A stretch of DNA of 64,000 nt, from the NCBI GenBank assembly GCA_002269645.1, contig NIVC01000026.1, positions 31,395 to 95,394 of the forward strand, given 5' to 3'. The notes under the pieces were generated by a model that saw only the letters and a list, made by a program, of their open reading frames with translations, was not told the DNA's origin and searched no databases. This document shows, piece by piece, positions 1,010 through 52,375 of this stretch. A program made the translations under genes and the position numbers. Origin of the DNA: Macrostomum lignano (lineage: Eukaryota). Position 1 is the first letter of the stretch. Every line of letters begins with the position of its first letter.

Positions 1010-2645
1010 TTTACATGACACCCTTCATGTCTGACATGACGCTTCTTTTGATTTTTACATTACACTTCTTTTATTCTTCCATGATGCTTCTTAATTTTTT
1101 AAATGACGCTTTCATTAGTTTTTAAATGAGGCTTCTATGATTTTTTCATGACGCTTCTATGATTGTTTACATGACGCTTCTATGCTTTTTACATGACGCT
1201 TCTATGCTTTTTACATGACGCTTCTATGATTATTTCATGACGCTTCTATGATTGTTTACATGACGCTTCTATGATTATTTACATGATGCTTCTACGATTT
1301 CTGCAGGACGCTTCTATGATTTTTACATGATGCTTCTATGATTTTTTCATGACGCTTCTATGATTTTTTCATGACGCTTCCATGATTTTTTACATGACAC
1401 TTCTATGATTTTTACATGACGCTTCCATGATTTTTTCATGACGCTTCTGTGATTGTTTATATGACGCTTTTATGCTTTTTATATGACGCTTCTATGATTT
1501 TTACATGACGCTTCTAGGTTTTTTATATGACGATTCTATGATTTTTACATGACGCTTCCATGATTTTTTACATGACGCTTCTATGCTTTTTACATGACGC
1601 TTCTATGATTATTTCAAGACGCTTCTACGATTTCTGCAGGACGCTTCTATGATTTTTACATGACGCTTCCATGATTTTTTCATGACGCTTCTGTGATTGT
1701 TTATATGACGCTTCTATGCTTTTTATATGACGATTCTATGATTTTTACATGACGCTTCTATGATTTTTACATGACGTTTCTATGATTTTTTCATGACGCT
1801 CCAATGTTTTTTTCATGACGCTTCTATGATTTTTTCATGACGCTTCTATGATTTTTACATGACGCTACTATGATTTTTACATGACGCTTCCATGATTTTT
1901 TACATGACGCTTCTATGATTTTTACATGACGCTTCTATGATTATTTCATGACGCTTCTACGATATCTGCAGGACGCTTCTATGATTTTTTACATGACGCT
2001 TCTATGATTTTTACATGACGCTTCCATGATTTTTTACATGACGCTTCTATGCTTTTTATATGACGATTCTATGATTTTTACATGACGTTTCTATGATTTT
2101 TTCATGACGCTCCAATGTTTTTTTCATGACGCTTCTATGATTTTTTTCATGACGCTTCTATGATTTTTACATGACGCTACTATGATTTTTACATGACGCT
2201 TCCATGATTTTTTACATGACGCTTCTATGCTTTTTACATGACGCTTCTATGATTATTTCATGACGTTTCTACGATATCTGCAGGACGCTTCTATGATTTT
2301 TTACATGACGCTTCTATGATTTTTTACATGACGCTTCTATGATTGTTTACATGACGCTTCTATGATTGTTTACATGACGCTTCTATGATTTTTTACATGA
2401 CGCTTCTATGATTGTTTACATGACGCTTCTATGATTTTTTACATGACGCTTCTATGATTGTTTACATGACGCTTCTATGATTTTTTACATGACGCTTCTA
2501 TGATTTTTTACATGACGCTTCTATGATTGTTTACATGACGCTTCTATGATTTTTTACATGACGCTTCTATGATATTTTCATGACGCTTCTATGATTTTTT
2601 ACATGACGCTTCTATGATTTTTTACATGACGCTTCTATGATTTTT
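1010..2645. repeat. Minisatellite, 21-22 bp unit (CATGACGCTTCTATGATTTTTA)
   Basis: Continuous tandem array visible in the sequence. Confidence 0.95.
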
Positions 2646-3250: not shown

Positions 3251-5483
3251 TAATAGTGCCTTTAATTTAAGAGAATTTGGTTAACTTGAACTCAGGATAA
3301 TCAAGTTTTTAATCTCCATGGATAGACCACGGTCAACAAGAAGAAAAAGGAAGGTTAGGCAATATTTAGAGGGAGAGTACTGATTACTAACTGACTGAAT
3401 TTCAAATACTAATCTCCTAAAATAAAGACAGGGAAGGTTAAGAATGACAATCTTTACTGTAAACCAAGGCTAATTCAGTCAAATGTGGGCAATTAGACAA
3501 TCCAAGCAATAAGTTTATCTTAACTATAAAAGACAAGCTACAAAAAAGCAATTAGAAAACTGTGACAATACAAAACCTATGAAATTCTGATGTCTGATTT
3601 CAAGGCTCTAAAATCTTTCAAAGTTAAAATTAGATGCAAAACCATTATATCAATTGCTACATTCCCATAACTAAAATACAAATATATTGCTTCATTATAA
3701 ATGATGAACAAATGTCATACATAGACAAATGTCAATTGTTGCTAGCATCCAAAATTTTAGGATTGAGATCCTATCCTACCTCTAGTCATGTCTTAGCTTA
3801 TAGTAAAGATAAAAATAGAAATATTAAGGATTAGATCCCAGGGTTTAGACAAAATTGAGTGGTCAAAATTGCATTGAACTTTTACTTTGATATAATAGAC
3901 TTAATTCTACACCTTTATTTGGAGTCACTATAGTAGCCTAAGTTCATTGCATCTACTCACTCATGCAACTAAACTATAAGTCATATAGCAAATCCCTTGC
4001 ATATGCAGACATACCAGTATCTTAGATGGATATGTCATTAAGAATTTAAAGTCATTTTAATTATACAAGGCTAAGAGAAATGTGGTAAAGCACAAACATT
4101 TTGCTGATTCAAAAATAGCTTAATAAGAATGACTTGAAATTTGATACACAACTATTCATCAATACACCAATTTACCTGCCTAAATGGCATTGAACTAAGT
4201 ACTAATTCTTGTATCATTTCAGTTTAGGAAAAATTGTAAACTTGTTCTACAATGAAGATATGCAATGGTGCTAACTCTGAAAGCTTGCTACTTTGGTTTA
4301 ATAGCCAAAGCAGAAAATTGAGGCTGAATGAATGAAGAATGAATGAAATAGTGATGAATCAATAAGCAGAACTTTTCTGATAGCCCTTATAGCAACAGTA
4401 CAATTTGTATCTAAATCATAACTTGGCTTATACATTGCAATATATATATATGAACTTTAAAGTGATTTGACTCATGTCACTTCACTTATACAAAAGCAAA
4501 TTAGAGTTTTATTTTTCTTTCATTAAAATTAATAAACAAAGTCTATAGCCTAAGTTTTTTATCACTAGCACTAAGACACAAAATTGCATTGGATGTCTAA
4601 TTTCAAAATGTAATTTGGAAAGTCAAGATATTATATAATATTAATGTTGTATTGAAAACTTAGCCTAGGCTTTTTGCTAGTACTAGGAGACAAAATTTCA
4701 ATTAAATTCTTATTTGAAGATGCAATATTAAAAGTCAAGCTATTATACTATCCCTATCATATAAAAAATAAACCTAGTATACAATTATGATTGCTAATTT
4801 TAAACAGGCTTGATATAATAGTCAAGTGAAGGCTATTATATTACTGCAACAATATATTATCAATATGGCATATTAGAAATTTGTGGTATACTAAACAGCC
4901 AAAAGGATTTTTAAGTATTTTATATATAACTATTAAATTATCATAATGTTTATTATACTATTGAAATTGACTTTTAGTTAAAAAGATACATTAACTTAAG
5001 TAGCATATCTTTAAGGAATTCATCAGTATCAAGATATTAGACAAAAAGGGTTCTCTATAGACATATCAATGTAGAATTTTTTAATATTAAAAATGTTATA
5101 TAATAATGATAGTCTTAAACTTGGAGTTGAAGATAAATCTAAATATACTAAATAAGATTGTAAACCCAATTAATCTTTATATTCATGAATGATTTTTTTT
5201 TCTGAAAAAAATTTAATATAATACTAGAGTTTTTAAGAGCCTTTTCAAAAAAAAAGGTATTCACATGTCTAACTTGTAAAGCTATATGCCAAAAAATAAC
5301 ATTGTTATGTGCATATGCCATATTTTTAATTTGTTATCCAATTCTAAAAAGTAAAAACCTAGGACCTGAATCTCTAAATAATAATTTATAGTTATGATAC
5401 TTTGTCATAAGGGATTTTAATTTTTAACAGGATTGTTAGTTGGATCTTATATTTTTGATAAAATACTATAATCTAAGCCACAA

Positions 5484-5843
5484 GGGGGCTGTAGCCCAGC
5501 AGTCTAGTGCAGGCTTTGGTGTGCCAGCAACCCAGGCTCAATTCCAAGTGTAGTCATTAATTTGGGGCTGAACTAGAATCTTGGCTTGGCTCTGCTTGTG
5601 CAATTAATGGCCTTGAGAGCCAACCCCCTAAGGCACAGTGAAGTGTACATGCCTAAAAATAAAATAAAGTAGGGCTGCTATACACTCCTGTGTGAGTGTG
5701 TGCTTGCATACGTATCTGTGTGCTTGTATGCCTGCTCAGGGGAGTCTGTGCTACAGAATGGGCAGTAATGCCTCTCACCAGTTATGTGCTATGTCGTTTA
5801 AAGTGTGCCAGGGTGCACACAACCTCCATGCCTCTAATAAAAA
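5484..5843 (+). mobile_element. tRNA-derived SINE, CpG-decayed
   Basis: 14-bp target-site duplication AATCTAAGCCACAA (5470-5483 / 5844-5857), decayed A/B-box head (GGGGCTGTAGCCCAGCAGTCTAG...GGCTCAATTCC), AATAAAAAAA tail. Confidence 0.85.
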
Positions 5844-6192
5844 AATCTAAGCCACAATTAGGATAATGTTTGCTAAAAATTCTAGCATGTAAAGCCTTTT
5901 TAGACTAATACCTTGGCATATATATTTTCAAAGATATCTTTGCAATGCATATGGTAAAATGTATAATACAGTGGCAGTATAATATAGTAAGTAGGCATAT
6001 AGCTAGGATTCACATCAAGGAGGAGGGGCAAAGATATCAATCCATCACTGATATTATTCATAAAAGCAAAATAAAAAGGTAAGGCATGTCCTTAGTATCC
6101 CCCCTGGAAATGCTTTTAATAGTGAATATAAAATAATAAAATATTTGAATATAATAATTTCATTATTTTTAATATATAACTGCAATATATAG

Positions 6193-6750
6193 TTATTAGA
6201 GATTGCAATCCTAGGATCCCGGAATCCTGAAATCCTGGGATTAGGCCCAAATCCTAGGATTTCCAGTCCCGGGATTTAGGGTCTTGAATCCTAGGACTAA
6301 TTTTTGTTATTATTTTTACAAAAAGTGCTGTAATAAGAACATAATTGGGCCCAAAACTAGTTTATTATACTGCATTATTTTCTGTTAATTGCCTAATGTT
6401 GCATGGCACCTTTGACCTTTATAAACCCCACATCATAGAATTAAATTTAAAATTTATTCCAATATAAGTTTTCATATATGATTTGCTTCTTTATTACTAA
6501 TTAGAACTTTTATACTATTTACTTAAATACTGTTCCAAGATAATGCTGTTTTTGATCTACAAATAGATCATTAACTCTTTTTAAACAATCAAAAATGGAT
6601 GAAAAAACATTTAGCGTACATTTTGCCTAAAATTTCAACCTAGAAGCTTAAAAATCAGTATTTTTTTTATCCCAGGATAGGCCAAATTCCGGGATTAAAT
6701 CTTAGGAGCCCAGGATTGCAAGAAACTGGGATTTTGCAATCCCTAGTACT
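6193..6750. mobile_element. MITE-like element with (TAG)GGATTGCAA termini and CCCGGGAT-derived subterminal repeats
   Basis: Imperfect inverted ends TATTAGAGATTGCAATCC / GGATTTTGCAATCCCTAGTA; repeated TCC(C/T)(G/A)GGAT motifs at both ends. Confidence 0.55.
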
Positions 6751-8937
6751 TATGTAACAATATAGGACTATAGGACCCTTTCTTATATTACAAAATTTGG
6801 TATTTTATATTACCAATAGCTAGGCCTATACCATATACTAGTTCTATGGCACAATTTTCTAGCATATTGTTCAGAGACCAGATACTTTACATAAACCAAT
6901 TTTTCACATAAATTGTATGCCAGATTTTTTTTTGTATTTATATAAAGATTTGGGAGTAAGGAACCACTAGAAGTTATCATCCTGTCAATATATTTGTAAA
7001 TTATGTTTTTTATTTTCTTTAATTTAACCACCTTATTTTTTTGCATTGCAACTTTGTTACTTCATTTAGATAGCATTTGTTTAATATGTTGACTATAAAA
7101 ATAACTTTCACTATTTATAGTCATTATAACAATAATGACTGCTAATTGATATAGAAAAGGAGCCTCCTCTTTTTTAACTACTAATACTATTTTTGCTACT
7201 ATTATACTATTGTAATAATGCCATTATTGCTATAGTAAGCTAGAAACAATCCTAATTGTAGCCAATTGCCATTATTATAGATAGCATAGAGAACTTATAG
7301 AAGATATATTCTCTGCTATTATAAAGTATTATCATCTTTTAGTATTAGTGCATATTCATGCGAAAAATATTTTGGAAATAAAATTATACTTAAATAGGCT
7401 AAGCCATTAGAACCAAAACTTCATTAGCCTAAGCCAAAGTTAAGCAAAGGCTAATTAATTAGTAACTATCACTTCATTTGGTTAATAATATAAAATTTTG
7501 CTATGTGAAAAAAAGCCAAGCCTATTCACAGTTTAAAAAAATAAAATGGTTAATGATATATTCATTATATTATTAAAATATTATACTTAAGTAGGCCTAG
7601 AAAAAATGAACTAAACCAAACTAGGCCCTAGGCTTTTTCTATTTCTATTTTAGAATTCCAGACTATGGGTAATAGAAATTACATTTTGATAAGTCTAGTC
7701 CTCCAGAACTTGAAAATGAAATTGTAAATGCTAAATGACCAATTTAGCATTAAATAGGCCTATTTCCCAAAAATGCAAAACTTTCATAGTACTTATTGTA
7801 AAATTTTAAAAGGTCAAAAAGGTAAAAAAGAAATGATCCTAGATTATATAGTTTTTACTTTCAAGTTAAATCACATTTTGAGCATTATAAACAAATAGAA
7901 TAAAGTAATTATTGCATAGAAACTACTAATGTTGAAACAAAATAATAAAAATATTTGTTTAACAATTTGCAAGTTTTTTAACACTATCACAAATAACTAG
8001 CAATACATTAGGATACTAAATTTGTGATTTCACTGATTTGTAGAAAACTTTTAGAAGGCTAATTTCTTCACTTCAATATTTGTACAAAACAACACAAGTG
8101 ACATAGGCCTACTCTAATCTAAGTGTGTTTGGACTTTTAATTCTTTTAGACTAATTATAATTTTCTATTTCAATTTAATAATTGCAAAGCAAATGCACTA
8201 ATCAAGTTATTTAAAGTCTTATGCAATGGTCTATCAATCAAATTCTAGCCATTTGTTGTCCTGGTATCTCTTTTCTCAATTGTTAACTGGTATTTTCAAG
8301 GCTGTTAAAAAATTATAATTTATTCTAATATTCTAATTTCTAAATGAGTATGAGTCAGGCCCTAGCAATACAAAACAAAAGTATACTTATAGTTATACTA
8401 CTGTAAAAGTATAGCTACTTTAAAACTACAAGCGTACAAGGCAATTCTAGTAGCCTATGGCAACAAGAATAAGCCATACAAACTAAAAGTTGCCTGAATT
8501 ATTCTACTTATTGTGACATTTTTATTTGAGGATTAACTGCATGGTTAACTCTAGACTAGCACATGCTTTTTGTTTTTTTATTTTATCTGCTTACAGTGAG
8601 ACTGTGAGAGGCCAGTGGCCAGGTGCCTAAGCATATGCCTAGCACCTCAGCAGCAGCACCTGGCCAGTGGCCAACCCTGTGGCTGTGGCCATATATTATG
8701 ATATGATTAGTGACTAGAATAAAACTAAAGTGACAAACAAATGTCAAAGTCCTTGTTTGACTTTGACATTACAAACAAATGTCAAATGCATTACCATTAC
8801 AACATAAAAACTTAAAGCAAACAGTATAACAATAAACACTATATAAAGTTCTAAACTAAACATACTAATTGTAAATACTGCTTAAGCCTTCCTAGAGCTT
8901 TACTACCTAACTACCTTTAATTACAATTTGATGTCGA

Positions 8938-9158
8938 TGTATCCTGGGTTTTTTTGTGCGAATGGGTGCGAATAGCATCCTGGTCTTAAAAATCGCACCC
9001 TGAAATTTGACTCAGGGTGCGAAAAACGCACCCAAATTTTTGCAAGTTTTTGTCTGCAGCAGTGCAGCGCATCCTGGTCTTGAAAATCGCACCCTGAAAT
9101 CTAGCACAGGGTGCGAAATCGCACCCAAGTTATGGACGAAAAAAAAACCCAGGATGTA
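8938..9158. mobile_element. MITE (~220 bp)
   Basis: Perfect TIR ATCCTGGGTTTTTTT (8941-8955) / AAAAAAACCCAGGAT (9141-9155); internal CGCACCCTGA..AGGGTGCG hairpins. Confidence 0.8.
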
Positions 9159-10145
9159 TCACTGTATGAGTAAAAATTATGAGGGTATTGCTAAAATTCA
9201 TATTAGCGATCTAAGTTAAGTTGTAAAATAATTTTGAATAGTGTTTAAATAATATAATAAACAGTAAACAGCGTTTTTTATATAGACATTTTTTAAATAC
9301 GTAAGACCTTTTATCAAAGCTTTTTTACGTGATAATATTATTCTTTATAAAAATTTGTTAAAACCGTTTATAAATTTATTTGACCAAACAATAAGATCAT
9401 AGTTACAGTCGATAATAAACTTCATTTTTCTGTTCGATTGCGATTGCAGCTTTGATCAAGCGGCCTTTATATTGCAGCCTTAGTTTTTTTCACCTGTTAT
9501 CCGAAATTTTATGTTTATGCACATTTTGTCTGCATATTTACGTTATAATATAACGGGGAAAAATTATAAACCTAGAGCCTAGAGGCGGGTGAAGCGATCT
9601 CTTCGTGAGAATATACATTTACCATTTTTTTATAATTTAGTAGGGCCTATATCTAGGGCTAAGCATATTTTATTCTATTCAATAGAATCTACTTAGGCGG
9701 TGAGCCTTAGTGTACATTGATTGACATAGTATATACCAATGTAGGACCTTAAGAATTCGGATATGCACTGCTGCGTGCATTCTGTAGGTTTTTCTTGCTT
9801 CTACTATGTAGTCTATTATATCAATGTAGCTTGCGTTGTAACTCGTAAGGCTAGGTCTAAGCCTGTCTATTAGAGTCCAACCAATCAATCAAGAATTAGA
9901 TAGTATCTTACTATAAGTATATGCCTTTGTCGTCTTATAATATTCTTAATTTATTTCACTCATTAGGCCCTACTCAGCTGCCAGTCTGTTGCTAGAGCCG
10001 CAGTTGGTTCTTGGCCACACTCTGGATCATATAGTATATCTGGGTTTTTTTTTTCGCCAGAGATAAGGTGCGAAATCGCACCTTGTGCCAAATTTCAAGG
10101 TGCGATTTTAAGGCTCAGAGTGCAATTTCTCTTGAGTCTTGTTTA

Positions 10146-12450
10146 GAATGTGAGGGTTTCACGAGAGATATTCAGACAGACATTCGAAACGATCGTCTGT
10201 AACTTTAAACAAAATTGACCCGCTTCAACCATCTTTTTGGCAAATACTTACGCAAGTGTTGGGCGTCGAATAAGCTTTAATTTATTAACTGAAGTAAAAA
10301 TCCTTCTGACATACATTGATTTAAAAATTGCTTAGCAACACTAGCTCTGATTAGAAATCGCTTTAGTGTTGACGAAAATTGTTTTGATCGTAGCAGCCTA
10401 AAAGCAGATACTGGATTTAAAAATGCTTCGATTTACTCTATACGCATGTCTCAGCTTTAAAATGACACCTCAGGCGTCGCAAAAGACAGCTTTGATGCTG
10501 AGATATTCGACACTAAACATGCATTGCTTTGCGCAATCTCACATTCAGAAATTTCACTGATTTTTTGTCGATATTTGTGCAGTTGCCGTGTCCTTGTTTT
10601 TCATCAGAAACTTGTCAAATTCTAGTCATGTCCAGTTTAAACCTGGACTTCTCTTAAACTGTCTTAAGTATTTGATTTTTAATGATTCCTGCCTTTATAT
10701 TGCATAGATTGTACCTGAGTCAGTGAGTCTGTGAGTGTACATTTGTACATATGGCAACCAATCATGACTTTTTCACCGCTTTGCAGTTCAAATAAATATA
10801 CGAGTGTACAAGAAACATGTTCCAACTGTTATTGAGAGAAATTGACGTCGCGTTTATTAACAGTCAGTGGCAATTAATATGAAGCAAATAGTTTATTGTT
10901 ATGTTTTTACTTTTTTTGCGTGGCAATTCTGCTATCCAAATCAGAATGAGGTAAGCGGTGGGAATAAAATAAAAAGGAAGAATTTTTTCTACTGTTGTTG
11001 CAACCCAATAGCTATATGTACTTCAAACTTTTTAGATTGAACTGGCGATTTCTAATGTACTGCTAAGCTTTCCAATCCCTACGGACTACAGTAGCAGTTC
11101 TTAACTTTTTTTCTGTCTTGACTTCTAGACTCGGAATTCGGAACAACCTAAGGAGCCGCATGAAAATATTTAATTGGATAAAGATATTTTCTAAAAACAG
11201 CTCAAGTCGTGACACATCTTCTTCTCATCTCAGTCCATCAACTGCTGCTCCTTCTGAGACCAAAGCGATCGTGAAAGTAAAACAGATCAGTTTAGATCCC
11301 ATGGCCATGAATACAACCATTTCAATTGTGAACCTGCTTCGCTTACAAGTACGAGCACTAGCCTTCCATTTGATGCCATTAGCTCACTTAACTCTGAAAT
11401 AGTTCAAGGACGGTTCCAAATGTTGAGATCTGACGTAGAAGCAGTCCAATTTGTGGAAATTTATCAACTGGACTCCATGAATCACTCCAATGAAAGGCGG
11501 CGAATAGCTGCAGAATGCGTAAACAAGTTTAAGTGAGTCACAAAAACCCCATTTACTGTAACTACATACACTTGTACGTTAGCAAGGCTCCATGCGATGG
11601 TTAATAAATGGAGAAGTAGACAAGCATCTGAACAAATATTGAATAAAAATCAGTGAAGTTTCCGAATGTGAGTTTGAGCAAAGCAACGTTTAGTGTCGAA
11701 TATCTCAGCATCAAAGCTGTCTTTTGCAATGCCTGAGGTGTCATTTTAAAGCTGAGACATGCGTATAGAGTAAATCGAAGCATTTTTAAATCCAGTATCT
11801 GCTTTTAGGCTGCTACGATCAAAACAATTTTAGTCAACAGTAAAGCGATTTCTAATCAGAGCTAGTGTTGCTAAGCAATTTTTAAATCAATGTATGTCAG
11901 AAGGATTTTTACTTCAGTTAATAAATTAAAGCTTATTCGACGCCCAACACTTGCGTAAGTATTTGCCAAAAAGATGGTTGAAGCGGGTGAATTTTGTTTG
12001 AAGTTACAGACAATCATTTTGAATGTCTGTCTGAATGGGTCTCCCTAAAACACACCCCGCACCGCCCTGCAGCGCTACACATTAAAACAAATTGGACTAT
12101 AACTAAAGACACTTCAGAATGCGTTTTCTGTTAAGCTTCAAGTTTTTATTAAATTTAGTTTTTTTACTTTGAAATATAAAATTCGGTGAACAATAAGTGA
12201 TATTAATAATAATATTAATAAAATAATAATATTATAATTAAATAATGAAAACGAGAATATAAAAAATAATAATATTTAAAAAAATAAATAAAGATATTTA
12301 TTCCATTACTATTTTAACTTTTCCTTGCAATCAAATACTGCATTGACAAAAAATGTTATAATGTGTAGCAGTTCGGGGCCCGGTGCGGGGCGTGTTTTAG
12401 GGAGCCTTTGTCTGAATATCTCTCGTGAAACCCTCACATTGCTCACATTT
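10146..12450. mobile_element. Long-TIR (~400 bp) foldback/Mutator-like element
   Basis: 10167-10565 is the near-perfect reverse complement of 11645-12036; the TIR resumes at 12410-12450 after an insertion. Confidence 0.85.
12037..12409. mobile_element. hAT-type MITE inserted in the right TIR of the foldback element
   Basis: 8-bp duplication GTCTGAAT (12029-12036 / 12410-12417); inverted ends CTCCCTAAAACAC / GTGTTTTAGGGAG. Confidence 0.8.
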
Positions 12451-13039
12451 CAGACAACTGGGAATGTATATTTTAATATCTTACATAAGGCTATAGCTAT
12501 AGGCTATATCGCCTATATGACTTAATAGGATTTAAAGAGTTATTTTGTTTCATATTTTAAGGCAGTGCATAAAAAATAGCTTAAGCATGGTTAAGCCTTT
12601 AAAGAAAAATGGTTATAAGACCGCACCTAAACCGCACCTACTTTTTTAATTTCAGGGTGCGATTTTAAAATTTAGGGTGCATACGCACACTCTGCGCACA
12701 AAAAAAAAACCCTGTAGTATATGCCCTAAAATTTGGGTTTTCATTGGCTTTGCATGTCAAAAGTTAGTTGTGCATAGTTGGCATGTATGACTTCTAAGTT
12801 TAAGAAAATAATAGGCCCTACTAATAGGCCTGTTAATGTATAAGCTTATCTAGTGTATACTTTTATAGAATCATATAGAAGAGTTGGTGTTGAGAAAACA
12901 AAGTATTGAAAAATTAATATTTATATATAAATTTCAAGTTGTCTAGTTTTTATGCTCAATCACTTTAAATAAATGATAGTTTAATAATAGTTTAACGATT
13001 TAATTCATTTTAATTTAAATCTTTATTGTAATTAGTGTT

Positions 13040-14365
13040 CTGCCGTAGCTGTAGCTACGGCTATGGGATCCTACAGCAAATGTGGTAGAATAGGTGCCTA
13101 CGGCAGCTACAGATATGCCTACAGTAGCTAGCTGCTTTTATGGCTACAACTATAGAAATATGGTAGTTGTTGTCACATTCCGTAGATTCCTATAGCCATA
13201 GTTATTTATGTTAAAACATTGAAAAAATATTAGAAACAGGTAAAGTAAAACAAAGATACTTTTAGTGAACTGTATTATCAATTTAGAAACTTTTAAAATA
13301 TACCTAAAAAGTACAATTAAACACTAGCAAAGTCTAATTTTTATTGATGTGAAAAAGTTCAGCATTATTACTTTCAGTAACAATTAAGTGTTGTTGCTTT
13401 GAAAAAAGACAAAATATAATCTTACAAAGGCAATTGAGTGTTTCTTTTATTTTCTAACTTAATTTGCAGTTTTTTAAACACTAGGTTATCTTCTTGTTTC
13501 GAAATATTTTGTTTTCTAGACTTTTTGTTAAAACTATGGAACTATAGGAATATGGTAATATTAGGGTCCCTATGGCTATGGAATATTGAAAATTGGAATA
13601 AGCCATAGTTTTGCTTATGGCTATGGCTATGGTACATGGACCCTCCTTTTGGTCGAACATTATTTGCAATATTTGCCAATTCCAATATATAGGCAATATA
13701 ATTGGGCTCTATTACTTGGCTAGTCAACTACTTTGTTTTGCTATTTTTACTACATTTTATCTTTGACTTAGTGCCATTTGTCTTTGCCTTATGCTCTTAC
13801 TAGCTTGTCTAAATCTATCTTGATATGCCTTTATCTTAGCTTATCCTACCTTATTCTGCCCCATGTTGCTCTGCCCTAGCCAATTTTGCAATGAAAAAAG
13901 CTATCTTCTTGATTATAAAATTTAATAATAGTCATTTTAATAGTAAGTATTTAATAGTACTTTGCCATAATAAGGGTCTAAGTGTTATCACTATAGTTGT
14001 AAGCAAAACTATGGTATGGCTTATTCCAATTCTCTATATTCTATAGCTATAAGGACCCAAAAATTATTATATTCCCATAGTTCTCATAGCCATAGCCATA
14101 TTTTTAACAAAAAATCTAAGAAACAAAATATTTTAAATTAGGAAAATAACCTAGTGCTTAAACAATTACAAATCAAGGTAGAAAATGAAATAAACACTCA
14201 ATTGCCAACTACAGCTAAAAGAAATCTGTGAAATATGACAACAACTATCATATTTTTGTAGTTGTAGCTGTAAGAGCAGCTATCTACTATAGGCATATCT
14301 ATAGTTGTCATAGGCACCTATTTTACTATATTTGCCATAGGATCTCGTAGCTGTAGCCATAGTAT
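13040..14365. repeat. Decayed inverted-repeat pair (~370 bp arms)
   Basis: 13040-13200 pairs with 14215-14365 and 13430-13625 pairs with 13990-14210; the left arm is interrupted by ~230 bp. Confidence 0.75.
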
Positions 14366-15193
14366 TTGAATCTTAATACAATCGATACCTAACTAATGGC
14401 AAGAGTAAGCACTGTACTTTATTTAACAATTATTTGTATATACTAACAACATTAAAAACCATCATTTTTTTAAACTTAAAAGATATGTGCATTGTGCTCT
14501 ATTTTGTAATGTATAGTTTTTTATATTGTATGAAATTAAACCCAAGGCCTTTCACTCTATGCAATAGGGCTATTTATTTTAGACATAATGTGCAAGTGGT
14601 TTAAGCTTTAGATACTAAAAGACAAAGCATGCTATATTTTTGGAACCCAATCATTTTAAGACAATTTTAATATCTAAATAATTGTCTTCTAAAACTAATA
14701 TAGTATACAAGATGCTCATTTATAAAAAAGTGCTAGAGTATAGTAGGGTTTCTTAAATGCTTGAAATCTAAAAACAAAAAATGTTATACTTTATTGAAAC
14801 CTTATTCCTTTAAGAATACTTAAGGATAATTTTTAATACCTTATATTTTTAAAACAATTTTTAATTTTTTAAATTGTTATGCAAAACTGATAATACATTG
14901 CCAAATTAACAAATATAATTAGATATTTTATTATAGCCAGATCATAATTTATTGTATTGCTTATATTTTATACTATTCCTGGAATCCTAAAGGCCAGGAT
15001 TCCAACAAAAAATATGATATACCTAAATAACTAGGAATGGAAAACTACAAATTTGAAGGCCAATCTATTAATAACTTGTCCTCAAAAAGCATTACTTGAA
15101 AAGGTTTTACCACAGATGCAAACTCACTGACTACAAGGTCAATGCCTTTTTGCTTTTAGCTCTTTTAAACCAGTGAGGACTTATGGTAATGTA

Positions 15194-16524
15194 CAAGGGT
15201 TGTGTCATAAATTCGCTTACAACTGCAAATATCAAAGAAACAAAACAAAGAACAGCTAATTGTCAACATTGCACTTCTCAACATAGTCACCCCCAAGCTG
15301 CACACATTTGTGCCATCTCTCTGGCAGCTTGCTGATGCCCTGTGCGAAGAATTCCGTGGGGGTCCCTCGTACCCACTGGCTGATGGCCGAGCTGAGTGCA
15401 GAAAGGCTTCCATAGTGATGGCCACGAAGAGGCTCTTTCATTTTAGGGAACAACCAGTAGTCACTAGGGGCCAGGTCAGGAGAATAGGCAGGGTGAGGCA
15501 GCAACTCGAAGCCTAGTCTCCTGATGACATCCATAGTTGCATTGCAGGTATGCGGCCTGGCGTTGTCCTGCTGCAGCACAGTGCCCCTGGTGATCCTTCC
15601 CCGGCGCTCACTCTTGATCTTCTCACGCAGCCATTCCAATATTTCACAGTAGTACTGGGCATTGATGGTTCTGCCTTCAGGTAGCCACTCGATCAGCAAG
15701 ATGCCTTCTCTGTCCCAGAACACAGTGGCCATGCGCTTACCTGCTGACTGCACCGCCTTGGCCTTGACCGGTGGGGGTTCGTGAGTAGCCTTCCAGACGC
15801 TGCTCTGCTGTTTTGTTTCCGGTTCGTAGAAGTGAAACCACGTTTCATCACCAGTCACCAGGCGGCCAAGAAAGTCGGGCTCGTTTTGATAGGCGTTGAG
15901 CAGGTGGCGGCACATCTGACCCTCTCTTGCAGTTGGACAGGAGTCAGCAGTTTAGGGACCCATCGTGCAACAACTCGTGTCATATGCAGATGGTCGGAGA
16001 TGATGCGATGAATGCTCTTCATTGGTATTGCCAACAAGTCCTCTAACTGCCTCAGGGTTGCTCCACGATCATCGTCCAGGGCATGCTGCACACGCTGGAT
16101 GTTGTCACTGGAAGTGGATGACCGCGGTGCACCTGGACGGGGAGCATCATCAACTGTCTCCCAGCCGTCCTCAAAGCGCTGCACCCACTTTGACACAGTT
16201 TGTTTCGAAGGTGCATCCTCACCAACGATTTGCAGCAGCTCGCGGTAAATATCAGCCTGCTTCTTCTGCTGCTTCCATAACGACCAAATGACAGTGCGCT
16301 TGGCAGCTTCACTTTTCTCCATACTGGCTAGAAGGGTGGTTTGAATGCCACTCGATTTCTGCCTTATCTCAAAAGCCAAAGGGAAGATTTTCCATAGACA
16401 ATAAGATCGATGGTGCCTTAGTCTGTAACAAAAATTCTGCCCCAAAGTACAAAAGAAACAGACACTATGTAAATTTGTCAAGAGTTAAAGCAAGTATGTC
16501 AGCGAATTTATGACACAACCCTCG
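15194..16524 (-). mobile_element. Full-length mariner transposon (1331 bp)
   Basis: 24-bp TIRs C(A/G)AGGGTTGTGTCATAAATTCGCT with one mismatch; TA TSD at 15192-93 and 16525-26; transposase inside. Confidence 0.95.
15256..16322 (-). pseudogene. Mariner D,D34D transposase with a single 1-bp frameshift near 15915
   Basis: MEKSEAAK start, HTH region, WVPKLL, VTGDETW, QQDNARPH and YSPDLAPSD motifs (34 residues between 2nd and 3rd Asp). Adding one A at GTCAGA^TGTGC gives a 355-aa ORF. Confidence 0.9.
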
Positions 16525-16722
16525 TAATTGTAACTGCTTTTTCAATAATTCCAATAACATTGCCTGTTGAAGTGTTAAACTAATCAAATCAACTTAAATC
16601 CATTAATAGCAATTTATCTATGATCTTCACTTTTGTAATGCTATACTTACAGCATAAAAACAAAAAAGCCATGCACTCGATTAAAAAGGATTAACATTTC
16701 TTTGCATGAGCAAATAAGCAAA

Positions 16723-17763
16723 ATGATGGCTGGCAATGGTAACCGAGGCGACAAGGAGACTGAGCAGCTCAGAAAGCTGTTCATTGGCGGCCTGACGCCA
16801 AACGTGACAGAAGACGATCTGAAGGGCCACTTTGGTCAGTGGGGCGAGCTTGTTGACGTGGTGGTGATGAAGGACAAGGTGTCTGGCCGGTCTCGCGGCT
16901 TTGGCTTCGTCACCTACAAGGACGAGTCAAGCGTGGATGACGCGCAGGCGAACCGGCCGCACGTGCTCGACAACAAGGAGGTGGACACGAAGCGGGCGAT
17001 GCCCCGGGGTGACGCGAACAAGGACGAGAGCCACGTGAGAGTGGAGAAGCTGTTTGTGGGTGGTCTGAAGCCGGAGACCACCGAGGACGATCTGCGCGAG
17101 TATTTCGGCTCCTACGGTGAGGTTGCGTCAGCCGAGATTGCCGTGATGCGGGAGACTGGCAAGCCGCGCGGCTTCGGCTTCGTCACGTTCAAGGACTACG
17201 ATCCGGTGGACAAGGCGATTCTGTACAAGCCGCACAACATCGGCGGCAATCCGCGAGTGGACTGCAAGAAGGCCCTGTCCAAAGAGCAGATGGCCGAGGT
17301 GAAGGCTCGCCAAGCTTCCGGGTTCAACGTTCGCGGCGGCTTCGCTGGGCGGGGCGGCGGCGGCGGCTATGGGGGTGGCTACGGAGGCGGATATGGCGGC
17401 GGCTATGGAGGCGGCTACGGTGGAGGCTACGGCAATGGGACCTATGCTGGTGGCTATGGCGACGGCGGCTACGGCGGTGGCTATGGCGAGGCTGGTTACG
17501 CCGGAGGTTACGCCGCCGGTGCCGACATGGGCGGCTACAGCGAAGGTGGTGAAGGCGCCTACGGCAATGGCGCAGCGGCTGGCGGCGGTTTCGGCTCCTA
17601 CGGCAGCCAAGGTTACGCTGGCGGCCCCGCCAAGCCGGTTGGCGGATTCGGCGGCGGCCCGCAGCGATTCCAGCCGTACGGCGCCGGCGGCCGTGGTGGA
17701 GGTCGCGGACGCGGCGGCGGTGCCACTGGTGGGTTCCGGGGTGGTCGTGGTGAGTGTTGTTAG
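16723..17763 (+). CDS. HNRNPA1/A2B1-like: hnRNP A/B-family RNA-binding protein (2 RRM + Gly/Tyr-rich tail), copy 1
   Basis: RNP2/RNP1 motifs LFIGGL/RGFGFVTY and LFVGGL/RGFGFVTF; GGGY repeats and RGG tail; first ATG 16723; possible terminal intron 17750-18294. Confidence 0.93.
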   Translation: MMAGNGNRGDKETEQLRKLFIGGLTPNVTEDDLKGHFGQWGELVDVVVMKDKVSGRSRGFGFVTYKDESSVDDAQANRPHVLDNKEVDTKRAMPRGDANKDESHVRVEKLFVGGLKPETTEDDLREYFGSYGEVASAEIAVMRETGKPRGFGFVTFKDYDPVDKAILYKPHNIGGNPRVDCKKALSKEQMAEVKARQASGFNVRGGFAGRGGGGGYGGGYGGGYGGGYGGGYGGGYGNGTYAGGYGDGGYGGGYGEAGYAGGYAAGADMGGYSEGGEGAYGNGAAAGGGFGSYGSQGYAGGPAKPVGGFGGGPQRFQPYGAGGRGGGRGRGGGATGGFRGGRGECC

Positions 17764-19839
17764 CGAGCCGGTTGGCTTAGTTTTTGGCGCATTTATTTTC
17801 AATTGCAAAATTGCTGGTAAAGAATTGCGCTCAAAATTAAAACTCGCTATATGGGATTAAGATATTTTTGCTCTAATATTCATCTTGTAAATTTCACCAC
17901 AAAATATTGCAGGCGGTTACTAATTGGGACTGGCTGATTAACTAACGGAAGGCACAATCGACTTTTATGCTGCCTGTAATTCGAGTCTTGGGGAAAACCT
18001 GCTACTAAATCTCTCTGTCGTCTGTTTACCAATTGGATGCTGTTCTCATGGGATTCGGGGTAAGTTTGATTGCACATTTAATCAATTTTTTGTTTTTATT
18101 GCTCACTAAAACTGTTGCTGTATGCGTGCGCCTGTTTGAACTGCGTGCAAGGCTAATCTTTTATTAGCTCAAACTATCTTTAAGAAAGTTGTTCTCTGTA
18201 AGTTAAGTGTACGGTGTTTATATGCTAAGAAAATGTGCTTATAATTTACTTAAGAATCAGTCATTAAATCTATATTTATATCTACTAATTTCAGGTTGAG
18301 CAAAAGTCACACACACACCCAGTCAGTCAGTCAGTCTGAAGCGCAGGGCCACTCAGATGTTAAGCAACCTAGGAGATTGTGTGTGCGTGTTGAGACCGTT
18401 TTTTATAGCGTAAGTAGGACAGGCCTGGTCTCGACAATGGACTGAGTGAGGAGATAATTCGGGCTAAGATAATTAGCCAATCAAAAGGAGAGCACAGATC
18501 ATGTTGGTAATGGAATCAGCCACGTTATTGAAAAGGTTGTTCAGCGGACTGCAGTGAAATCTCGACCCCGAAGTCAGTGAGGCAGCCAGTCACCAGCTTA
18601 ACTATTAATGCATAGACGGCAAGGTCTAATAAATGTGTTGTGCAATTACTCTTTGCTAAATGGGGATTATAAACTTATAATTTTTTATAAATCTGAAGTG
18701 TGCCCATATTCCTTATTTTATTTTGTCATGAGTTCTAAGGCTATGTGGGAGGAATATTATTTAAATTGCAGCTCGAATAACTATCTGCAGCCTCAGGTGT
18801 CAGGCGGGCATTAGTAGCGACTAGCGAGTATTTTCTCAACTTAAGACTGTTTTACTTAGCAGCTAATAGTCGATTTTTAGTGTTCATATTTACCTATCCA
18901 TATGTAATGAATAAGCTGTATACTAATTAGTCTTGTGTAATTTATCAGTTCTGTTTTTTGAGAAAACTGCCACTTGTAATAATATGCCAGTTAATTAAAT
19001 ATTGTTTGAATTCCTCAAGCTTAAGGCAACACGCAATTTTGTGTCAATTGCTCTTACAACTTTGCTCTTGCGTGAACATGATTGTTGTCAGTTAGGTGCA
19101 AAATAACTTATTATATAACTAGTAGTAGTATAAGTATACATATAGTCGTAAGTGTAAGCGGGTGTGACTATTTTTGTAGTTATTAATTAACTTTTCTTAC
19201 GCTGAAAAACTTCACTTTTACCACAATTAGTAGCTTCATTGTTCAAATTTAAGGCTTGGGCTATTTTTATTACTTATCAAAGGCGGTAAACTCTAATTTA
19301 GTTGATAATTGTTGTTCCATATTTCGCTTCTGTAAGATTAATAATTTGATCTGATCGACCCAATGTTAGCATCAAAAGTGAACATGAGTTGACAGGCTGA
19401 AATATAAGTTATTAATGGAAAAGGAGTTACTAATCTGCCAGGCCAAGCTGTAAAAAGCTAATTATTAAATAGGCCCGGTGTTGCTCCTAGCTAGCGAAAT
19501 TGTTGCTCTCGCAGCAGAGGCAGTGCGTGCGTTAGCTTAACTAGCCTTTTTCTATCGTGAAAGAGTTTCCTTAGTTGTCATTTAATTATTATGTAATTAT
19601 TCGGGTATTGTTGAAGCGTGAATGTGATTAACAATGATCTGGAATTGATTGAGCGCTTGTCTGTATGTGTTCTAGATCAATAAGGACGTTTAAGGTCAGA
19701 CATTAGAAAGTTCTTTGTGTGGCTGTGATTGAAAGAATGTCATCATCATTTGAAGTCTGTAACTCTACCCTACTAGGGTTCCATTCTGTTAAATGCCCAA
19801 CCAATCTAGTTGGATTGCTTTCAGACTTCAGAATTCAAC

Positions 19840-20823
19840 ATGATGGCTGGTAACCGAGGCGACAAGGAGACTGAGCAGCTCAGAAAGCTGTTTATTGGCG
19901 GCCTGACGCCAAACGTGACAGAAGACGATCTGAAGGGCCACTTTGGCCAGTGGGGCGAGCTTGTTGACGTGGTGGTGATGAAGGACAAGGTGTCTGGCCG
20001 GTCTCGCGGCTTTGGCTTCGTCACCTACAAGGACGAGTCGAGCGTGGATGACGCGCAGGCGAACCGGCCGCATGTGCTCGACAACAAGGAGGTGGACACG
20101 AAGCGGGCGATGCCCCGGGGTGACGCGAACAAGGACGAGAGCCACGTGAGAGTGGAGAAGCTGTTTGTGGGTGGTCTGAAGCCGGAGACCACCGAGGACG
20201 ATCTGCGCGAGTATTTCGGCTCCTACGGTGAGGTTGCGTCAGCGGAGATTGCCGTGATGCGGGAGACTGGCAAGCCGCGCGGCTTCGGCTTCGTCACGTT
20301 CAAGGACTACGATCCGGTGGACAAGGCGATTCTGTACAAGCCGCACAACATCGGCGGCAATCCGCGAGTGGACTGCAAGAAGGCCCTGTCCAAAGAGCAG
20401 ATGGCCGAGGTGAAGGCTCGCCAAGCTTCCGGGTTCAACGTTCGCGGCGGCTTCGCTGGGCGGGGCGGCGGCGGCGGATATGGGGGTGGCTACGGAGGCG
20501 GATATGGCGGCGGCTATGGAGGCGGCTACGGTGGCTATGGAGGTTACGGTGACGCAGGCTACGGTGGCTACGGGGATGCCGTAGGCTACGACGCCGGAGG
20601 CTACAGCGAAGGTGGCGAAGGCGCCTACGACAATGGCGGCGGTTTCGGCTCCTACGGCAGCCAAGGCTACGCTGGCGGCCCCGCCAAGCCGGTTGGCGGA
20701 TTCGGCGGCGGCCCGCAGCGATTCCAGCCATACGGCGCCGGCGGCCGTGGTGGTGGTCGCGGACGTGGAGGCGCCGGCATTGGCGGCGGCTTTCGCGGTG
20801 GCCGTGATGAGTGTCAAGGTTGA
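19840..20823 (+). CDS. HNRNPA1/A2B1-like: hnRNP A/B-family RNA-binding protein, copy 2
   Basis: RRM region essentially identical to copy 1; shorter Gly-rich tail; ATG 19840; TTTCAG acceptor-like site 15 nt upstream. Confidence 0.93.
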   Translation: MMAGNRGDKETEQLRKLFIGGLTPNVTEDDLKGHFGQWGELVDVVVMKDKVSGRSRGFGFVTYKDESSVDDAQANRPHVLDNKEVDTKRAMPRGDANKDESHVRVEKLFVGGLKPETTEDDLREYFGSYGEVASAEIAVMRETGKPRGFGFVTFKDYDPVDKAILYKPHNIGGNPRVDCKKALSKEQMAEVKARQASGFNVRGGFAGRGGGGGYGGGYGGGYGGGYGGGYGGYGGYGDAGYGGYGDAVGYDAGGYSEGGEGAYDNGGGFGSYGSQGYAGGPAKPVGGFGGGPQRFQPYGAGGRGGGRGRGGAGIGGGFRGGRDECQG

Positions 20824-52095: not shown

Positions 52096-52375
52096 CTTTG
52101 AAAGAGTAGGCCTGCCCAACGAATTGATTAGTTTTTTGGCAGTGAAAGAAGCACCAGGTTTGTTTCTGCCTGCTCTGCTTGAGTCATTCAAGATGGTCAT
52201 GTAATCAGACAGCTGAACTAGCACAATCATGGTGAAGATGGCGCATGCTATAGCATATAGGAGGCCATATGTGGCATCAAGGCTAATGCATGACAGACAC
52301 AAGACCCTACTCCAGTAAGCATCATGCACTGAAGAAAATGGTTCACAATGTGCAACATGACCATAAAGGAACAAC
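52096..52375 (-). CDS. Candidate internal exon with a hydrophobic (TM-like) segment
   Basis: GCACAG acceptor and AAG|GTATAA donor; open frame YGLLYAIACAIFTMIVLVQL; family not recognised. Confidence 0.4.

What the first reader, a model, noticed from the sequence alone, without database searches (positions are those of the whole stretch)
3300..15200. RIP-like hypermutation: CG>TA doublets in repeat-derived AT-rich domains
Seen: 3.3-8.9, 12.5-15.2 and 51.5-54.3 kb have very few CpG and abundant CTAG/TATAG, while exons nearby are CpG-rich. In the 6.2-kb element the motif CCCGGGA appears intact (CCCGG), as CCTGG/CCTGA and repeatedly as CCTAGG. The TSD-flanked SINE at 5484 keeps only 2 CpG in 360 bp. 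Known: 5mC deamination gives CG>TG or CG>CA; reaching TA needs a second hit in a CpA context or simultaneous loss on both strands, which is the hallmark of fungal RIP. Inference: a repeat-targeted methylation/deamination system (possibly non-CpG methylation) acts in this animal, which is notable because many flatworms lack DNMT1/DNMT3.
Basis: partly seen in the sequence, partly recalled or inferred. Interest (0 to 1): 0.75.

Follow-up and report, generated by a model that had tools for sequence, protein, structure and literature searches.

The report
Methylation-decayed CpG-poor DNA in Macrostomum
The AT-rich stretches that have lost nearly all their CpG are real, but they look like the ordinary long-term footprint of regional cytosine methylation in the flatworm Macrostomum, which keeps DNMT1 and DNMT3, and not like a fungal-style repeat-induced mutation system that changes CG to TA in one step.

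Summary
Window 3331-8935, 12723-15191 and 51489-54300 have CpG o/e of 0.07-0.17. In the first, 8 CpG are seen where 121 are expected. CTAG is 1.9-2.4x over-represented, and nearby exons have CpG o/e of 0.9-1.17.

The organism is Macrostomum, and M. lignano is reported to retain DNMT1 and DNMT3 and to have some 5mC. The "flatworms lack DNMTs" argument therefore does not apply.

Direct mutation counts contradict the doublet/RIP reading:
- Two genomic mariner copies lying in this kind of DNA, plus the arms of a young hAT element, show 23 CpG losses. All are single CG>TG or CG>CA hits at 6-10x the non-CpG rate, and none is a CG>TA doublet.
- Duplicated DNA outside these domains (1-kb hnRNP paralogs, many tandem arrays) keeps its CpG, so repetition is not the trigger.
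- RIP's second index is never met.
- TpA is not in absolute excess (o/e 0.87-1.05).

TG/CA do not accumulate as a CpG-only model predicts. Both the composition and one old foldback fit graded C>T rates of CpG >> CpA > CpT > CpC, which hints at non-CpG methylation. A second M. lignano locus shows the same signature.

Interest is moderate to low. Bisulfite or long-read methylation data, and TE consensus sequences built from the whole genome, would settle it.

The parts
3331..8935 (.). D1: AT-rich (GC 0.29), CpG-depleted matrix DNA with no long ORF. It carries the SINE and the 6.2-kb MITE.
   Evidence: CpG o/e 0.07, 8 CpG against 121 expected. CTAG is 2.4x and GGCC 6x over-represented, and TAGGCCTA occurs 4 times. 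No ORF exceeds 78 aa.
5484..5844 (+). SINE-like insert with a tRNA-like head, an A-rich tail and a 13-bp target-site duplication, ATCTAAGCCACAA, at 5471-5483 and 5845-5857.
   Evidence: GC 0.48, CpG 2 (o/e 0.10), TG o/e 1.71, CA 1.31, TA 0.99. This is mostly the single-hit decay signature. ARAGORN and Rfam do not recognise it.
6186..6752 (.). MITE-like element whose inverted ends are made of TCCYRGGA sub-repeats.
   Evidence: Units are CG x3, TG x1-2, CA x2 and TA x4. One homologous unit is TA in both arms.
8944..9152 (.). Young hAT-type MITE with 8-bp target-site duplication GATGTATC at 8936-8943 and 9153-9160.
   Evidence: Terminal inverted repeat CTGGGTTTTTTT/AAAAAAAACCCAG. CpG o/e 0.84.
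9161..10031 (.). CpG-normal, AT-rich island inside the depleted matrix. Both of its edges coincide with hAT insertions.
   Evidence: 22 CpG, o/e 0.96, GC 0.32. Unexplained.
10040..12714 (.). Young non-autonomous hAT-like element with long inner inverted repeats and 8-bp target-site duplication TAGTATAT at 10032-10039 and 12715-12722.
   Evidence: CpG o/e 0.88. The inner arms (420 bp aligned) differ by 8 single CpG transitions, 3 other transitions and 11 transversions, with no CG/TA pair.
12723..15191 (.). D2: a continuation of the CpG-depleted matrix. It carries the foldback element.
   Evidence: CpG o/e 0.17, TA 1.05, TG/CA 1.05.
13040..14372 (.). Old foldback element rich in CTAYRG hexamers. 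Its arms are 13054-13203/14207-14357 and 13429-13617/14000-14206.
   Evidence: Over 344 aligned bp there are 48 transitions and 10 transversions. C/T differences by 3' base are CpG 0.60, CpA 0.32, CpT 0.15 and CpC 0.12. The hexamers are CG 4, TG 13, CA 6 and TA 7.
15192..16526 (-). Mariner element with a frameshifted transposase, inserted in the depleted matrix. The next ~170 bp (16527-16700) are again CpG-poor.
   Evidence: It is 97% identical to intact copies L001-L003. Of 16 substitutions, 8 are single CpG transitions and there are no doublets.
51489..54300 (.). D3: a CpG-depleted AT-rich domain upstream of a minus-strand gene. It shows the classical decay pattern.
   Evidence: CpG o/e 0.17, TG/CA 1.26, TA 0.87.
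16723..20823 (+). Control: two intronless hnRNP A-like paralogs (16723-17763 and 19840-20823). They are duplicated DNA that has not been mutated.
   Evidence: The paralogs are 90% identical over 1 kb, with CpG o/e 1.15-1.17, 104 shared CpG, and 21 transitions against 16 transversions.
1034..2645 (.). Control: a 22-bp tandem array directly left of D1 that keeps its CpG.
   Evidence: 65 of 71 units have CG, 3 TG, 2 CA and 0 TA.

Best explanation
The window is Macrostomum nuclear DNA with a mosaic structure. An old, non-coding, AT-rich 'matrix' has been methylated at CpG in the germ line for a long time and has lost about 85-95% of its CpG through ordinary one-strand 5mC deamination (CG>TG or CG>CA). 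Genes, their introns and many tandem arrays are unmethylated and keep their CpG.

Transposons that land in the matrix form an age series. The hAT elements and the mariner are young, CpG-rich and just starting to lose CpG by single hits. The SINE is intermediate: its CpG is gone and TG/CA are in excess. The foldback, the 6.2-kb MITE and the matrix itself are old: CpG is gone, TG/CA are no longer in excess, and they are TA-rich.

TA is reached by a second, separate transition of the leftover TG/CA, under a strongly GC>AT-biased mutation spectrum. This step is probably sped up about 1.5-2.5-fold at C-before-A relative to C-before-C.

Shown: the depletion, the CpG-specific hypermutability with single hits only, the immunity of repeats elsewhere, and the same pattern at a second M. 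lignano locus.
Inferred: that the cause is DNMT1/DNMT3 methylation (taken from the literature, not measured here), and that there is a non-CpG contribution.
For: Organism:
- A DHX helicase exon is 90% identical to an M. lignano protein.
- The mariner belongs to a cluster that includes M. lignano PAA65918.1 on contig NIVC01001607.1.
- DNMT1 and DNMT3 are retained and low-level 5mC is reported in M. lignano (PMC11292947, PMC9246332, PMC10658182).

CpG hypermutability with single hits only:
- The window mariner and the L008 mariner, compared with four intact copies, show 15 CpG transitions per 220 CpG cytosines against 13 per 1150 non-CpG cytosines. That is 6x (p = 4e-6), with no adjacent double change.
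- The hAT-N inner arms show 8/68 against 3/234, which is 10x (p = 4e-4), with no CG/TA pair.

Outside the domains:
- CpG in tandem arrays is not hypermutable: 9/340 against about 4% for other C.

Simulation and composition:
- A CpG-specific 30x rate alone reproduces GC 0.29 and CpG o/e 0.08 with TA about 0.96, so no doublets are needed for TpA o/e near 1.
- Adding CpA x1.5-2.5 and CpT x1.3-1.5 reproduces CA/TG 1.0-1.13, CC/GG 1.14-1.26 and TA 1.04-1.08, as observed in D1 and D2.
- The foldback arms give the same order: CpG 0.60 > CpA 0.32 > CpT 0.15 > CpC 0.12 (CpA against CpT+CpC, p = 0.01).

Second locus:
- L008 shows the same mosaic and k-mer signature around its mariner copy.
Against: - No methylation was measured. 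The link to DNMTs rests on the literature.
- Only two loci (64 kb and 21 kb) were sampled.
- In the two short-motif families (TCCYRGGA and CTAYRG), TA is commoner than sequential hits predict if every unit began as CG. The implied second-hit rate is 0.5-2.6x the CpG rate, against about 0.2x measured in the mariner copies.
- The foldback has a non-CpG transition/transversion ratio of 3.6, against 0.27 in the nearby hAT-N arms. This points to element-specific heterogeneity that the simple age series does not fully explain.
- The CpA preference in the polarised mariner data is not significant: 1.33% against 1.0% (p = 0.78).
- GpC o/e of 1.7-1.8 and G+C clumps such as AGGCCT are not produced by the model.
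Confidence: 0.65

Rival explanations
1. One reading: a RIP-like, repeat-triggered system mutates both cytosines of a CpG at once (CG>TA) in repeated DNA.
For: - The dinucleotide budget in D1 and D2 is compatible. The CpG deficit is about equal to the rise in TpA relative to other AT-rich DNA, with no TG/CA excess.
- TA is frequent in the TCCYRGGA and CTAYRG motif families.
- The foldback arms are dominated by transitions, 48:10.
- TpA/ApT is 1.04-1.17 in D1 and D2.
Against: - There are 0 doublets among 23 CpG losses in young elements lying in this DNA, so the upper bound on their share is 12%.
- Only 1 CG/TA pair is seen in the foldback arms, where a pure doublet model predicts about 5.7 (my own hand calculation from the pair counts; Poisson P of about 0.02).
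- One TA unit of the MITE is TA in both arms, so it was probably ancestral.
- Duplicated DNA elsewhere is untouched: the hnRNP paralogs, and arrays up to 98% identical.
- (CpA+TpG)/(ApC+GpT) is 1.15-1.37, no lower than in controls.
- The depleted DNA is mostly not recognisable as repeats.
- D3 shows the plain TG/CA pattern.
Confidence: 0.04
2. CpG-only methylation plus time. There is no non-CpG contribution at all, and the lack of TG/CA excess, the CC/GG and TAG enrichment and the CAG depletion are unrelated neighbour-dependent mutation or repair biases of old neutral DNA.
For: - The CpG-only simulation already gives GC 0.29, CpG 0.08 and TA 0.96.
- The mariner copies show no significant CpA preference.
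- The hAT-N arms show almost no non-CpG transitions.
- D3 fits the CpG-only model.
- GpC excess is a window-wide feature seen in controls too.
Against: - The CpG-only model predicts CA/TG of about 1.25 and CC/GG of about 1.09. Observed values are 0.92-1.12 and 1.27-1.29 at two independent loci.
- The TAG/CAG count ratio is 3.4-3.7x higher than in control DNA, against 1.1-1.85x for the other TAN/CAN pairs.
- The foldback arms show CpA > CpT ~ CpC.
Confidence: 0.25
3. The AT-rich, CpG-poor DNA was already CpG-poor when it arrived, for example as an ancient AT-rich mobile element, organellar DNA or foreign DNA, rather than decaying in place.
For: The boundaries are sharp. There are no ORFs and no similarity to anything else sampled.
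Against: - Elements inserted into it are losing CpG in place at 6-10x the background rate.
- Two unrelated loci share the composition without sharing sequence.
- The inserts form a graded age series.
Confidence: 0.04
4. Editing by an AID/APOBEC-like cytidine deaminase directed at particular elements.
For: The foldback has a strong excess of transitions, including at non-CpG sites.
Against: The context dependence lies on the 3' neighbour (G >> A > T > C), as it does for DNA methyltransferases. It does not lie on the 5' neighbour as it does for APOBECs: TC/GA and AC/GT do not differ consistently from controls.
Confidence: 0.02

Closest known systems
CpG decay in methylated compartments of mosaic or globally methylated animal genomes (vertebrates, the sponge Amphimedon; TE or intergenic methylation)
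   Same: - Strong regional CpG depletion.
- CpG>TpG/CpA single-hit transitions several-fold above background.
- CpG-normal unmethylated islands with sharp borders.
- DNMT1 and DNMT3 present in the species (literature).
   Different: Here gene bodies look unmethylated (exon CpG o/e 0.9-1.17) and old intergenic DNA looks methylated. That is the opposite of the usual invertebrate gene-body pattern. TG/CA do not accumulate as they do in vertebrates.
Fungal repeat-induced point mutation (RIP; RID and DIM-2 in Neurospora)
   Same: AT-rich, TpA-rich end product. C>T transitions, with C-before-A among the favoured contexts. One inverted-repeat element is dominated by transitions.
   Different: It is not triggered by duplication. 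CpG, not CpA, is by far the main target. CpA/TpG are not depleted below ApC/GpT. Young repeats are hit only at CpG and only by single hits.
Non-CpG methylation by DNMT3 enzymes (CpA > CpT > CpC, with a CAG bias in mammalian ES cells and oocytes; from my own knowledge) and plant CHG methylation
   Same: The order of inferred C>T pressure by 3' neighbour, and the specific CAG/CTG>TAG/CTA shift, match this preference.
   Different: It is only inferred from composition and one element. No methylation data exist for these contexts in this animal, and the effect is small (about 1.5-2.5x) compared with CpG (about 30x).

Membership tests
Fungal-type RIP | Triggered by sequence duplication: linked or unlinked repeats of several hundred bp with at least ~80% identity are mutated. 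| tested here: not met
   The hnRNP paralogs (1 kb, 90% identical, 3 kb apart) keep 104 shared CpG, with 21 transitions against 16 transversions. Tandem arrays keep their CpG: 65/71, 35/35, 8/8 and 7/7. CpG in arrays is not hypermutable, at 9/340.
Fungal-type RIP | RIP indices: TpA/ApT above ~0.89 and (CpA+TpG)/(ApC+GpT) below ~1.03. | tested here: not met
   The first index is 0.98-1.17 in D1-D3, but 0.76-1.09 in controls, so it does not discriminate. The second is 1.15-1.37, the same as controls (1.15-1.49).
Fungal-type RIP | Many C>T transitions per event, including both strands, in freshly duplicated copies. | tested here: not met
   The young mariner copies and the hAT-N arms show only isolated single CpG hits, with 0 adjacent changes among 23.
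Fungal-type RIP | A RID/Masc1-type cytosine methyltransferase homologue. | not testable with these tools
   No such gene lies in the window. The genome cannot be searched here.
5mC-deamination CpG decay (DNMT1/DNMT3 methylation) | Regional CpG o/e far below 1, next to CpG-normal DNA of similar base composition. | tested here: met
   CpG o/e is 0.07-0.17 in the domains against 0.61-0.96 in AT-rich controls and 0.9-1.17 in exons. The same holds in L008.
5mC-deamination CpG decay (DNMT1/DNMT3 methylation) | CpG>TpG/CpA transitions elevated over non-CpG C>T in the affected DNA. | tested here: met
   6x in the mariner copies (p = 4e-6) and 10x in the hAT-N arms (p = 4e-4).
5mC-deamination CpG decay (DNMT1/DNMT3 methylation) | DNMT1 and DNMT3 present in the species, and 5mC present on this DNA in the germ line. 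| not testable with these tools
   Literature only: M. lignano keeps DNMT1 and DNMT3 and has low-level 5mC (PMC11292947, PMC9246332, PMC10658182). Where the methylation lies is not described there.
Invertebrate gene-body methylation | CpG depletion concentrated in transcribed gene bodies. | tested here: not met
   The exons of all genes in the window have CpG o/e of 0.71-1.17. The depleted domains have no ORF longer than 78 aa.
Non-CpG (CpA-biased) methylation footprint | C>T pressure ordered CpA > CpT > CpC within the methylated domains only. | tested here: inconclusive
   Composition at two loci and the foldback arms fit this order. The polarised mariner data give the same order, 1.33% > 1.08% > 0.91%, but it is not significant.

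The most novel reading that the evidence does not exclude
Macrostomum methylates old intergenic and transposon-bearing DNA rather than gene bodies. Within those domains it also methylates non-CpG cytosines (CpA, especially CAG, then CpT, then CpC) in the germ line. This leaves a reproducible decay signature: TAG/CTA and CTAG enriched, CAG/CTG depleted, and the remaining G and C left in GGCC/AGGCCT clumps. That would be an atypical methylome for an invertebrate, and a sequence-only marker for it.
Probability: 0.3. Interest if true: 0.55.

Novelty: new member of a known kind. Interest (0 to 1): 0.33.

Why it matters
According to a 2022 review (PMC9246332), the genomic distribution of DNA methylation was not known for any free-living flatworm. 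These sequence footprints predict where germ-line methylation lies in Macrostomum: sharply bounded AT-rich intergenic domains and the transposons inside them, not gene bodies. They also predict that methylation there may extend to non-CpG sites. Existing bisulfite or long-read data can test both predictions directly.

The result also removes a more exciting but unsupported claim, that of an animal RIP-like system.

Tried and rejected
- **SINE copies elsewhere.** Two (L004, L006) match the SINE over only 24 nt and the other two gave no BLAST alignment to it. None extends into the family, and the site read in L004 is not a tRNA gene. No SINE consensus could be built.\n- **Syntenic or homeologous M. 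lignano locus.** Exact look-ups of both hnRNP ORFs failed. The last homology search, with the hnRNP, was swamped by other animals and returned no Macrostomum protein.\n- **Rfam and ARAGORN on the window.** Nothing found.\n- **Dispersed repeats inside the depleted domains.** Only one 87-bp direct repeat, the MITE arms and the foldback arms. There is no similarity between the depleted DNA of the window and that of L008.\n- **L008 array pair (2969-3518 and 5089-5455) as a comparison of methylated and unmethylated DNA.** Uninformative, because both keep the single junction CpG.\n- **Tandem-array variant spectra as a genome-wide baseline.** These are noisy, because variants are copied within arrays. 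They were used only qualitatively.\n- **APOBEC-type 5'-neighbour context.** Considered and rejected.\n- **Wasik et al. 2015 (PMC4603488).** Not held in the library.

Full report

Yes. In 1-kb windows, CpG o/e falls to 0.00-0.31 across 3-9 kb, 0.12-0.25 across 13-15 kb and 0.10-0.28 across 52-54 kb, while the window average is 0.66. The gaps between successive CpGs reach 2381 bp (3330-5711).

Against 500 shuffles, the counts are:

| Domain | CpG seen | CpG expected | CTAG seen | CTAG expected |
|---|---|---|---|---|
| D1 (3331-8934) | 8 | 121.5 +/- 9.2 | 38 | 15.2 +/- 3.9 |
| D2 (12716-15191) | 9 | 50.9 +/- 5.9 | 12 | 6.5 |
| D3 (51489-54300) | 10 | 61.0 +/- 6.7 | 14 | 7.5 |

- CCTAGG occurs 6 times in D1 against 0.3 expected.
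- TATAG is modestly raised in D1 and D2 only.
- Exons have CpG o/e of 0.71-1.17.
- The SINE has a perfect 13-bp target-site duplication and only 2 CpG.
- The 6.2-kb element carries TCCYRGGA units with CG x3, TG x1-2, CA x2 and TA x4.

- TpA is not in absolute excess. Its o/e is 0.99, 1.05 and 0.87. It is only higher than in other AT-rich DNA of the window, where it is 0.66-0.94.
- The stated span includes 8.9-12.7 kb, which is CpG-normal.

**2. What organism, and what is known about it?**

A DHX helicase exon is 90% identical to a Macrostomum lignano protein. The mariner at 15192-16526 falls in a 90% cluster with M. lignano PAA65918.1, which is encoded on contig NIVC01001607.1.

Macrostomum, however, is the flatworm reported to retain both DNMT1 and DNMT3 and to have low-level 5mC (PMC11292947, PMC9246332, PMC10658182). 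[quoted passage not shown] The library held nothing newer on this.

**3. Anatomy of 3.3-16.7 kb**

The region is an AT-rich, ORF-free, CpG-depleted matrix interrupted by inserts of different ages:

| Coordinates | Feature | Details |
|---|---|---|
| 5484-5844 | SINE | GC 0.48, CpG o/e 0.10, TG 1.71, CA 1.31 |
| 6186-6752 | MITE | TCCYRGGA sub-repeats |
| 8944-9152 | hAT-type MITE | Target-site duplication GATGTATC, CpG o/e 0.84 |
| 9161-10031 | CpG-normal island | 871 bp |
| 10040-12714 | Non-autonomous hAT-like element | 2.7 kb, target-site duplication TAGTATAT, CpG o/e 0.88 |
| 13040-14372 | Foldback | Rich in CTAYRG hexamers |
| 15192-16526 | Mariner | Followed by ~170 bp of CpG-poor DNA before the first hnRNP gene |

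Outside these inserts, the matrix has no repeats within the window. It also has no similarity to the same kind of DNA at a second locus. "Repeat-derived" is therefore not shown.

**4. Direct test of the doublet claim**

*Mariner copies.* Four intact mariner contigs (L001-L003 and L009, from JGI samples and a Logan run) are virtually identical: L009 differs by two transversions. They give the ancestral sequence, which has 55 CpG.
- The window copy differs at 16 sites: 8 single CpG transitions, 5 other C>T and 3 transversions.
- The M. lignano copy in L008 also lies in AT-rich CpG-poor DNA. It has 7 single CpG transitions, 8 other C>T, 2 T>C and 6 transversions.
- Neither copy has any adjacent double change.
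- Per cytosine, CpG is hit at 6.8% against 1.13% elsewhere, which is 6x (p = 4e-6).

*hAT-N arms.* The inner arms of the hAT-N element differ by 8 single CpG transitions at 17 CpG sites, 3 other transitions and 11 transversions. CpG is hit at 10x the non-CpG rate (p = 4e-4), and there is no CG/TA pair.

*Combined.* All 23 CpG losses are single hits, which puts a 95% upper bound of 12% on the share of doublets. CpG is therefore lost one strand at a time, as with ordinary 5mC deamination.

**5. Is it repeat-induced?**

No.
- The two hnRNP paralogs (1 kb, 90% identical, 3 kb apart) keep 104 shared CpG and show 21 transitions against 16 transversions.
- Tandem arrays with a CpG in the unit keep it: 65/71, 8/8, 7/7, 9/11, 8/8 and 35/35. 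Their only variants are TG, CA or transversions, never TA.
- Across 17 arrays, CpG is not hypermutable: 9/340.
- A CpG-containing TE pair outside the domains shows only a 1.7x CpG effect.

CpG hypermutability therefore depends on location, not on repetition.

The second RIP index, (CpA+TpG)/(ApC+GpT), is 1.15-1.37 in the domains. That is the same as in controls and never below 1.03. TpA/ApT does not discriminate in this genome.

**6. Why TA-rich, then?**

I simulated neutral evolution with GC>AT bias and a 30x CpG transition rate. At equilibrium it gives GC 0.29, CpG o/e 0.08 and TpA o/e 0.96. A TpA o/e near 1 therefore needs no doublets. It is the younger or functional DNA that is TpA-poor.

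The same model, however, predicts CA/TG of about 1.25 and CC/GG of about 1.09. Observed values are CA/TG 1.12 and 1.05 in D1 and D2 and 0.92 in L008, with CC/GG 1.27-1.29.

Adding graded C>T rates by 3' neighbour (CpA x1.5-2.5, CpT x1.3-1.5, CpC x1) gives CA/TG 1.0-1.13, CT/AG 1.15-1.18, CC/GG 1.14-1.26 and TA 1.04-1.08. This matches D1 and D2.

Independent hints point the same way:
- CAG/CTG is depleted and TAG/CTA enriched. The TAG/CAG ratio is 3.4-3.7x that of control DNA, against 1.1-1.85x for the other TAN/CAN pairs, at both loci.
- The foldback arms differ by 48 transitions and 10 transversions. The C/T differences by 3' base are ordered CpG 0.60 > CpA 0.32 > CpT 0.15 > CpC 0.12 (CpA against the rest, p = 0.01).

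This order is that of DNA methyltransferase context preference (3' neighbour), not that of APOBEC-type deaminases (5' neighbour).

In the polarised mariner data the order is the same, 1.33% > 1.08% > 0.91%, but it is not significant. D3 fits the CpG-only model.

I therefore treat a non-CpG contribution as plausible but unproven.

**7.

In the TCCYRGGA and CTAYRG motif families, TA is more frequent than sequential hits predict if every unit began as CG. The implied second-hit rate is 0.5-2.6x the CpG rate, against about 0.2x measured in the mariner copies.

Three points weaken this:
- One TA unit of the MITE is TA in both arms, so it was probably present in the element from the start.
- In the foldback arms there is only 1 CG/TA pair. 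A pure doublet model fitted to the other pair counts predicts about 5.7. This figure is my own hand calculation from the counts (Poisson P of about 0.02).
- The numbers are small (10 and 30 units).

Only family consensus sequences from the whole genome can settle this.

**8. Generality**

The 20.8-kb M. lignano locus L008 shows the same mosaic. Genes have CpG o/e of about 0.97. Around the mariner, the AT-rich DNA has CpG o/e 0.25 (0.05-0.12 in two of its 1-kb windows), CTAG 2.05x, GGCC 6.3x, TAG 1.40, CAG 0.84 and CC/GG 1.27.

**9. Verdict**

The features are real.

The best explanation is long-standing regional germ-line CpG methylation by the DNMT1/DNMT3 system that Macrostomum retains. Decay proceeds through single hits, with a later second transition to TA that is probably helped by weaker non-CpG deamination.

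The mildly novel points are the apparent targeting of intergenic and transposon-bearing DNA rather than gene bodies, and the possible non-CpG footprint. Both can be tested with existing kinds of data.

Noticed in passing
window 9161-10031: An 871-bp CpG-normal island (o/e 0.96) sits inside the CpG-depleted matrix. Both of its edges coincide with independent hAT-type insertions, each with its own perfect 8-bp target-site duplication. It may be an unmethylated open-chromatin island that attracts hAT insertions. L008 6629-7246 is a similar CpG cluster.
   Followed up: partly
window 15192-16526; L001-L003, L009, L008 9516-10832: The mariner family has virtually identical intact copies (355-aa transposase) in three JGI metagenome samples (3300022723, 3300022725, 3300023199) and in Logan run SRR23862445. 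This suggests a recently active element, and Macrostomum-like DNA in those samples.
   Followed up: partly
window 1034-3249 and 56306-60090: These are two copies of a composite element: a 22-23-bp minisatellite plus a ~640-bp tail that is 73% identical between the copies. The unit of the left array has ACGC where the right array has GTGGC. The right array is CpG-poor (o/e 0.26-0.46) with high TG/CA, which looks like a homogenised CpG>TpG change.
   Followed up: partly
window 211-255: A short internal run of telomere-type repeat: (CTAACC)n, which is (TTAGGG)n on the other strand, 7.7 copies.
   Followed up: no
window 16723-17763 and 19840-20823: Two intronless, very GC-rich (0.64-0.65) hnRNP A-like paralogs (two RRMs plus a Gly/Tyr-rich tail) lie 3 kb apart. 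The first directly abuts the CpG-depleted matrix.
   Followed up: partly
window 25-49 kb (for example 39255-39440, 42986-43675, 43982-44314, 47870-49076): Minisatellite arrays fill a large part of the gene region. Several run through long open reading frames of the DHX helicase and kinase genes, for example the 21-bp array that encodes SVNRFDQ repeats. Whether they are exonic is unknown.
   Followed up: no
window 41192-41853 and 55647-56246: An 18-bp array (GGGATGCTTGCTATCTGG) is present twice in inverted orientation, 14 kb apart, at 75-84% identity.
   Followed up: no
window D1 (6821, 7592, 7755, 8104) and L008 AT-rich DNA: The palindrome TAGGCCTA occurs 4 times in D1 against about 0.05 expected. 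AGGCCT is 15x and GGCC 6x over-represented, so the surviving G and C are clumped and flanked by TA. GGCC enrichment recurs at the unrelated locus L008.
   Followed up: partly
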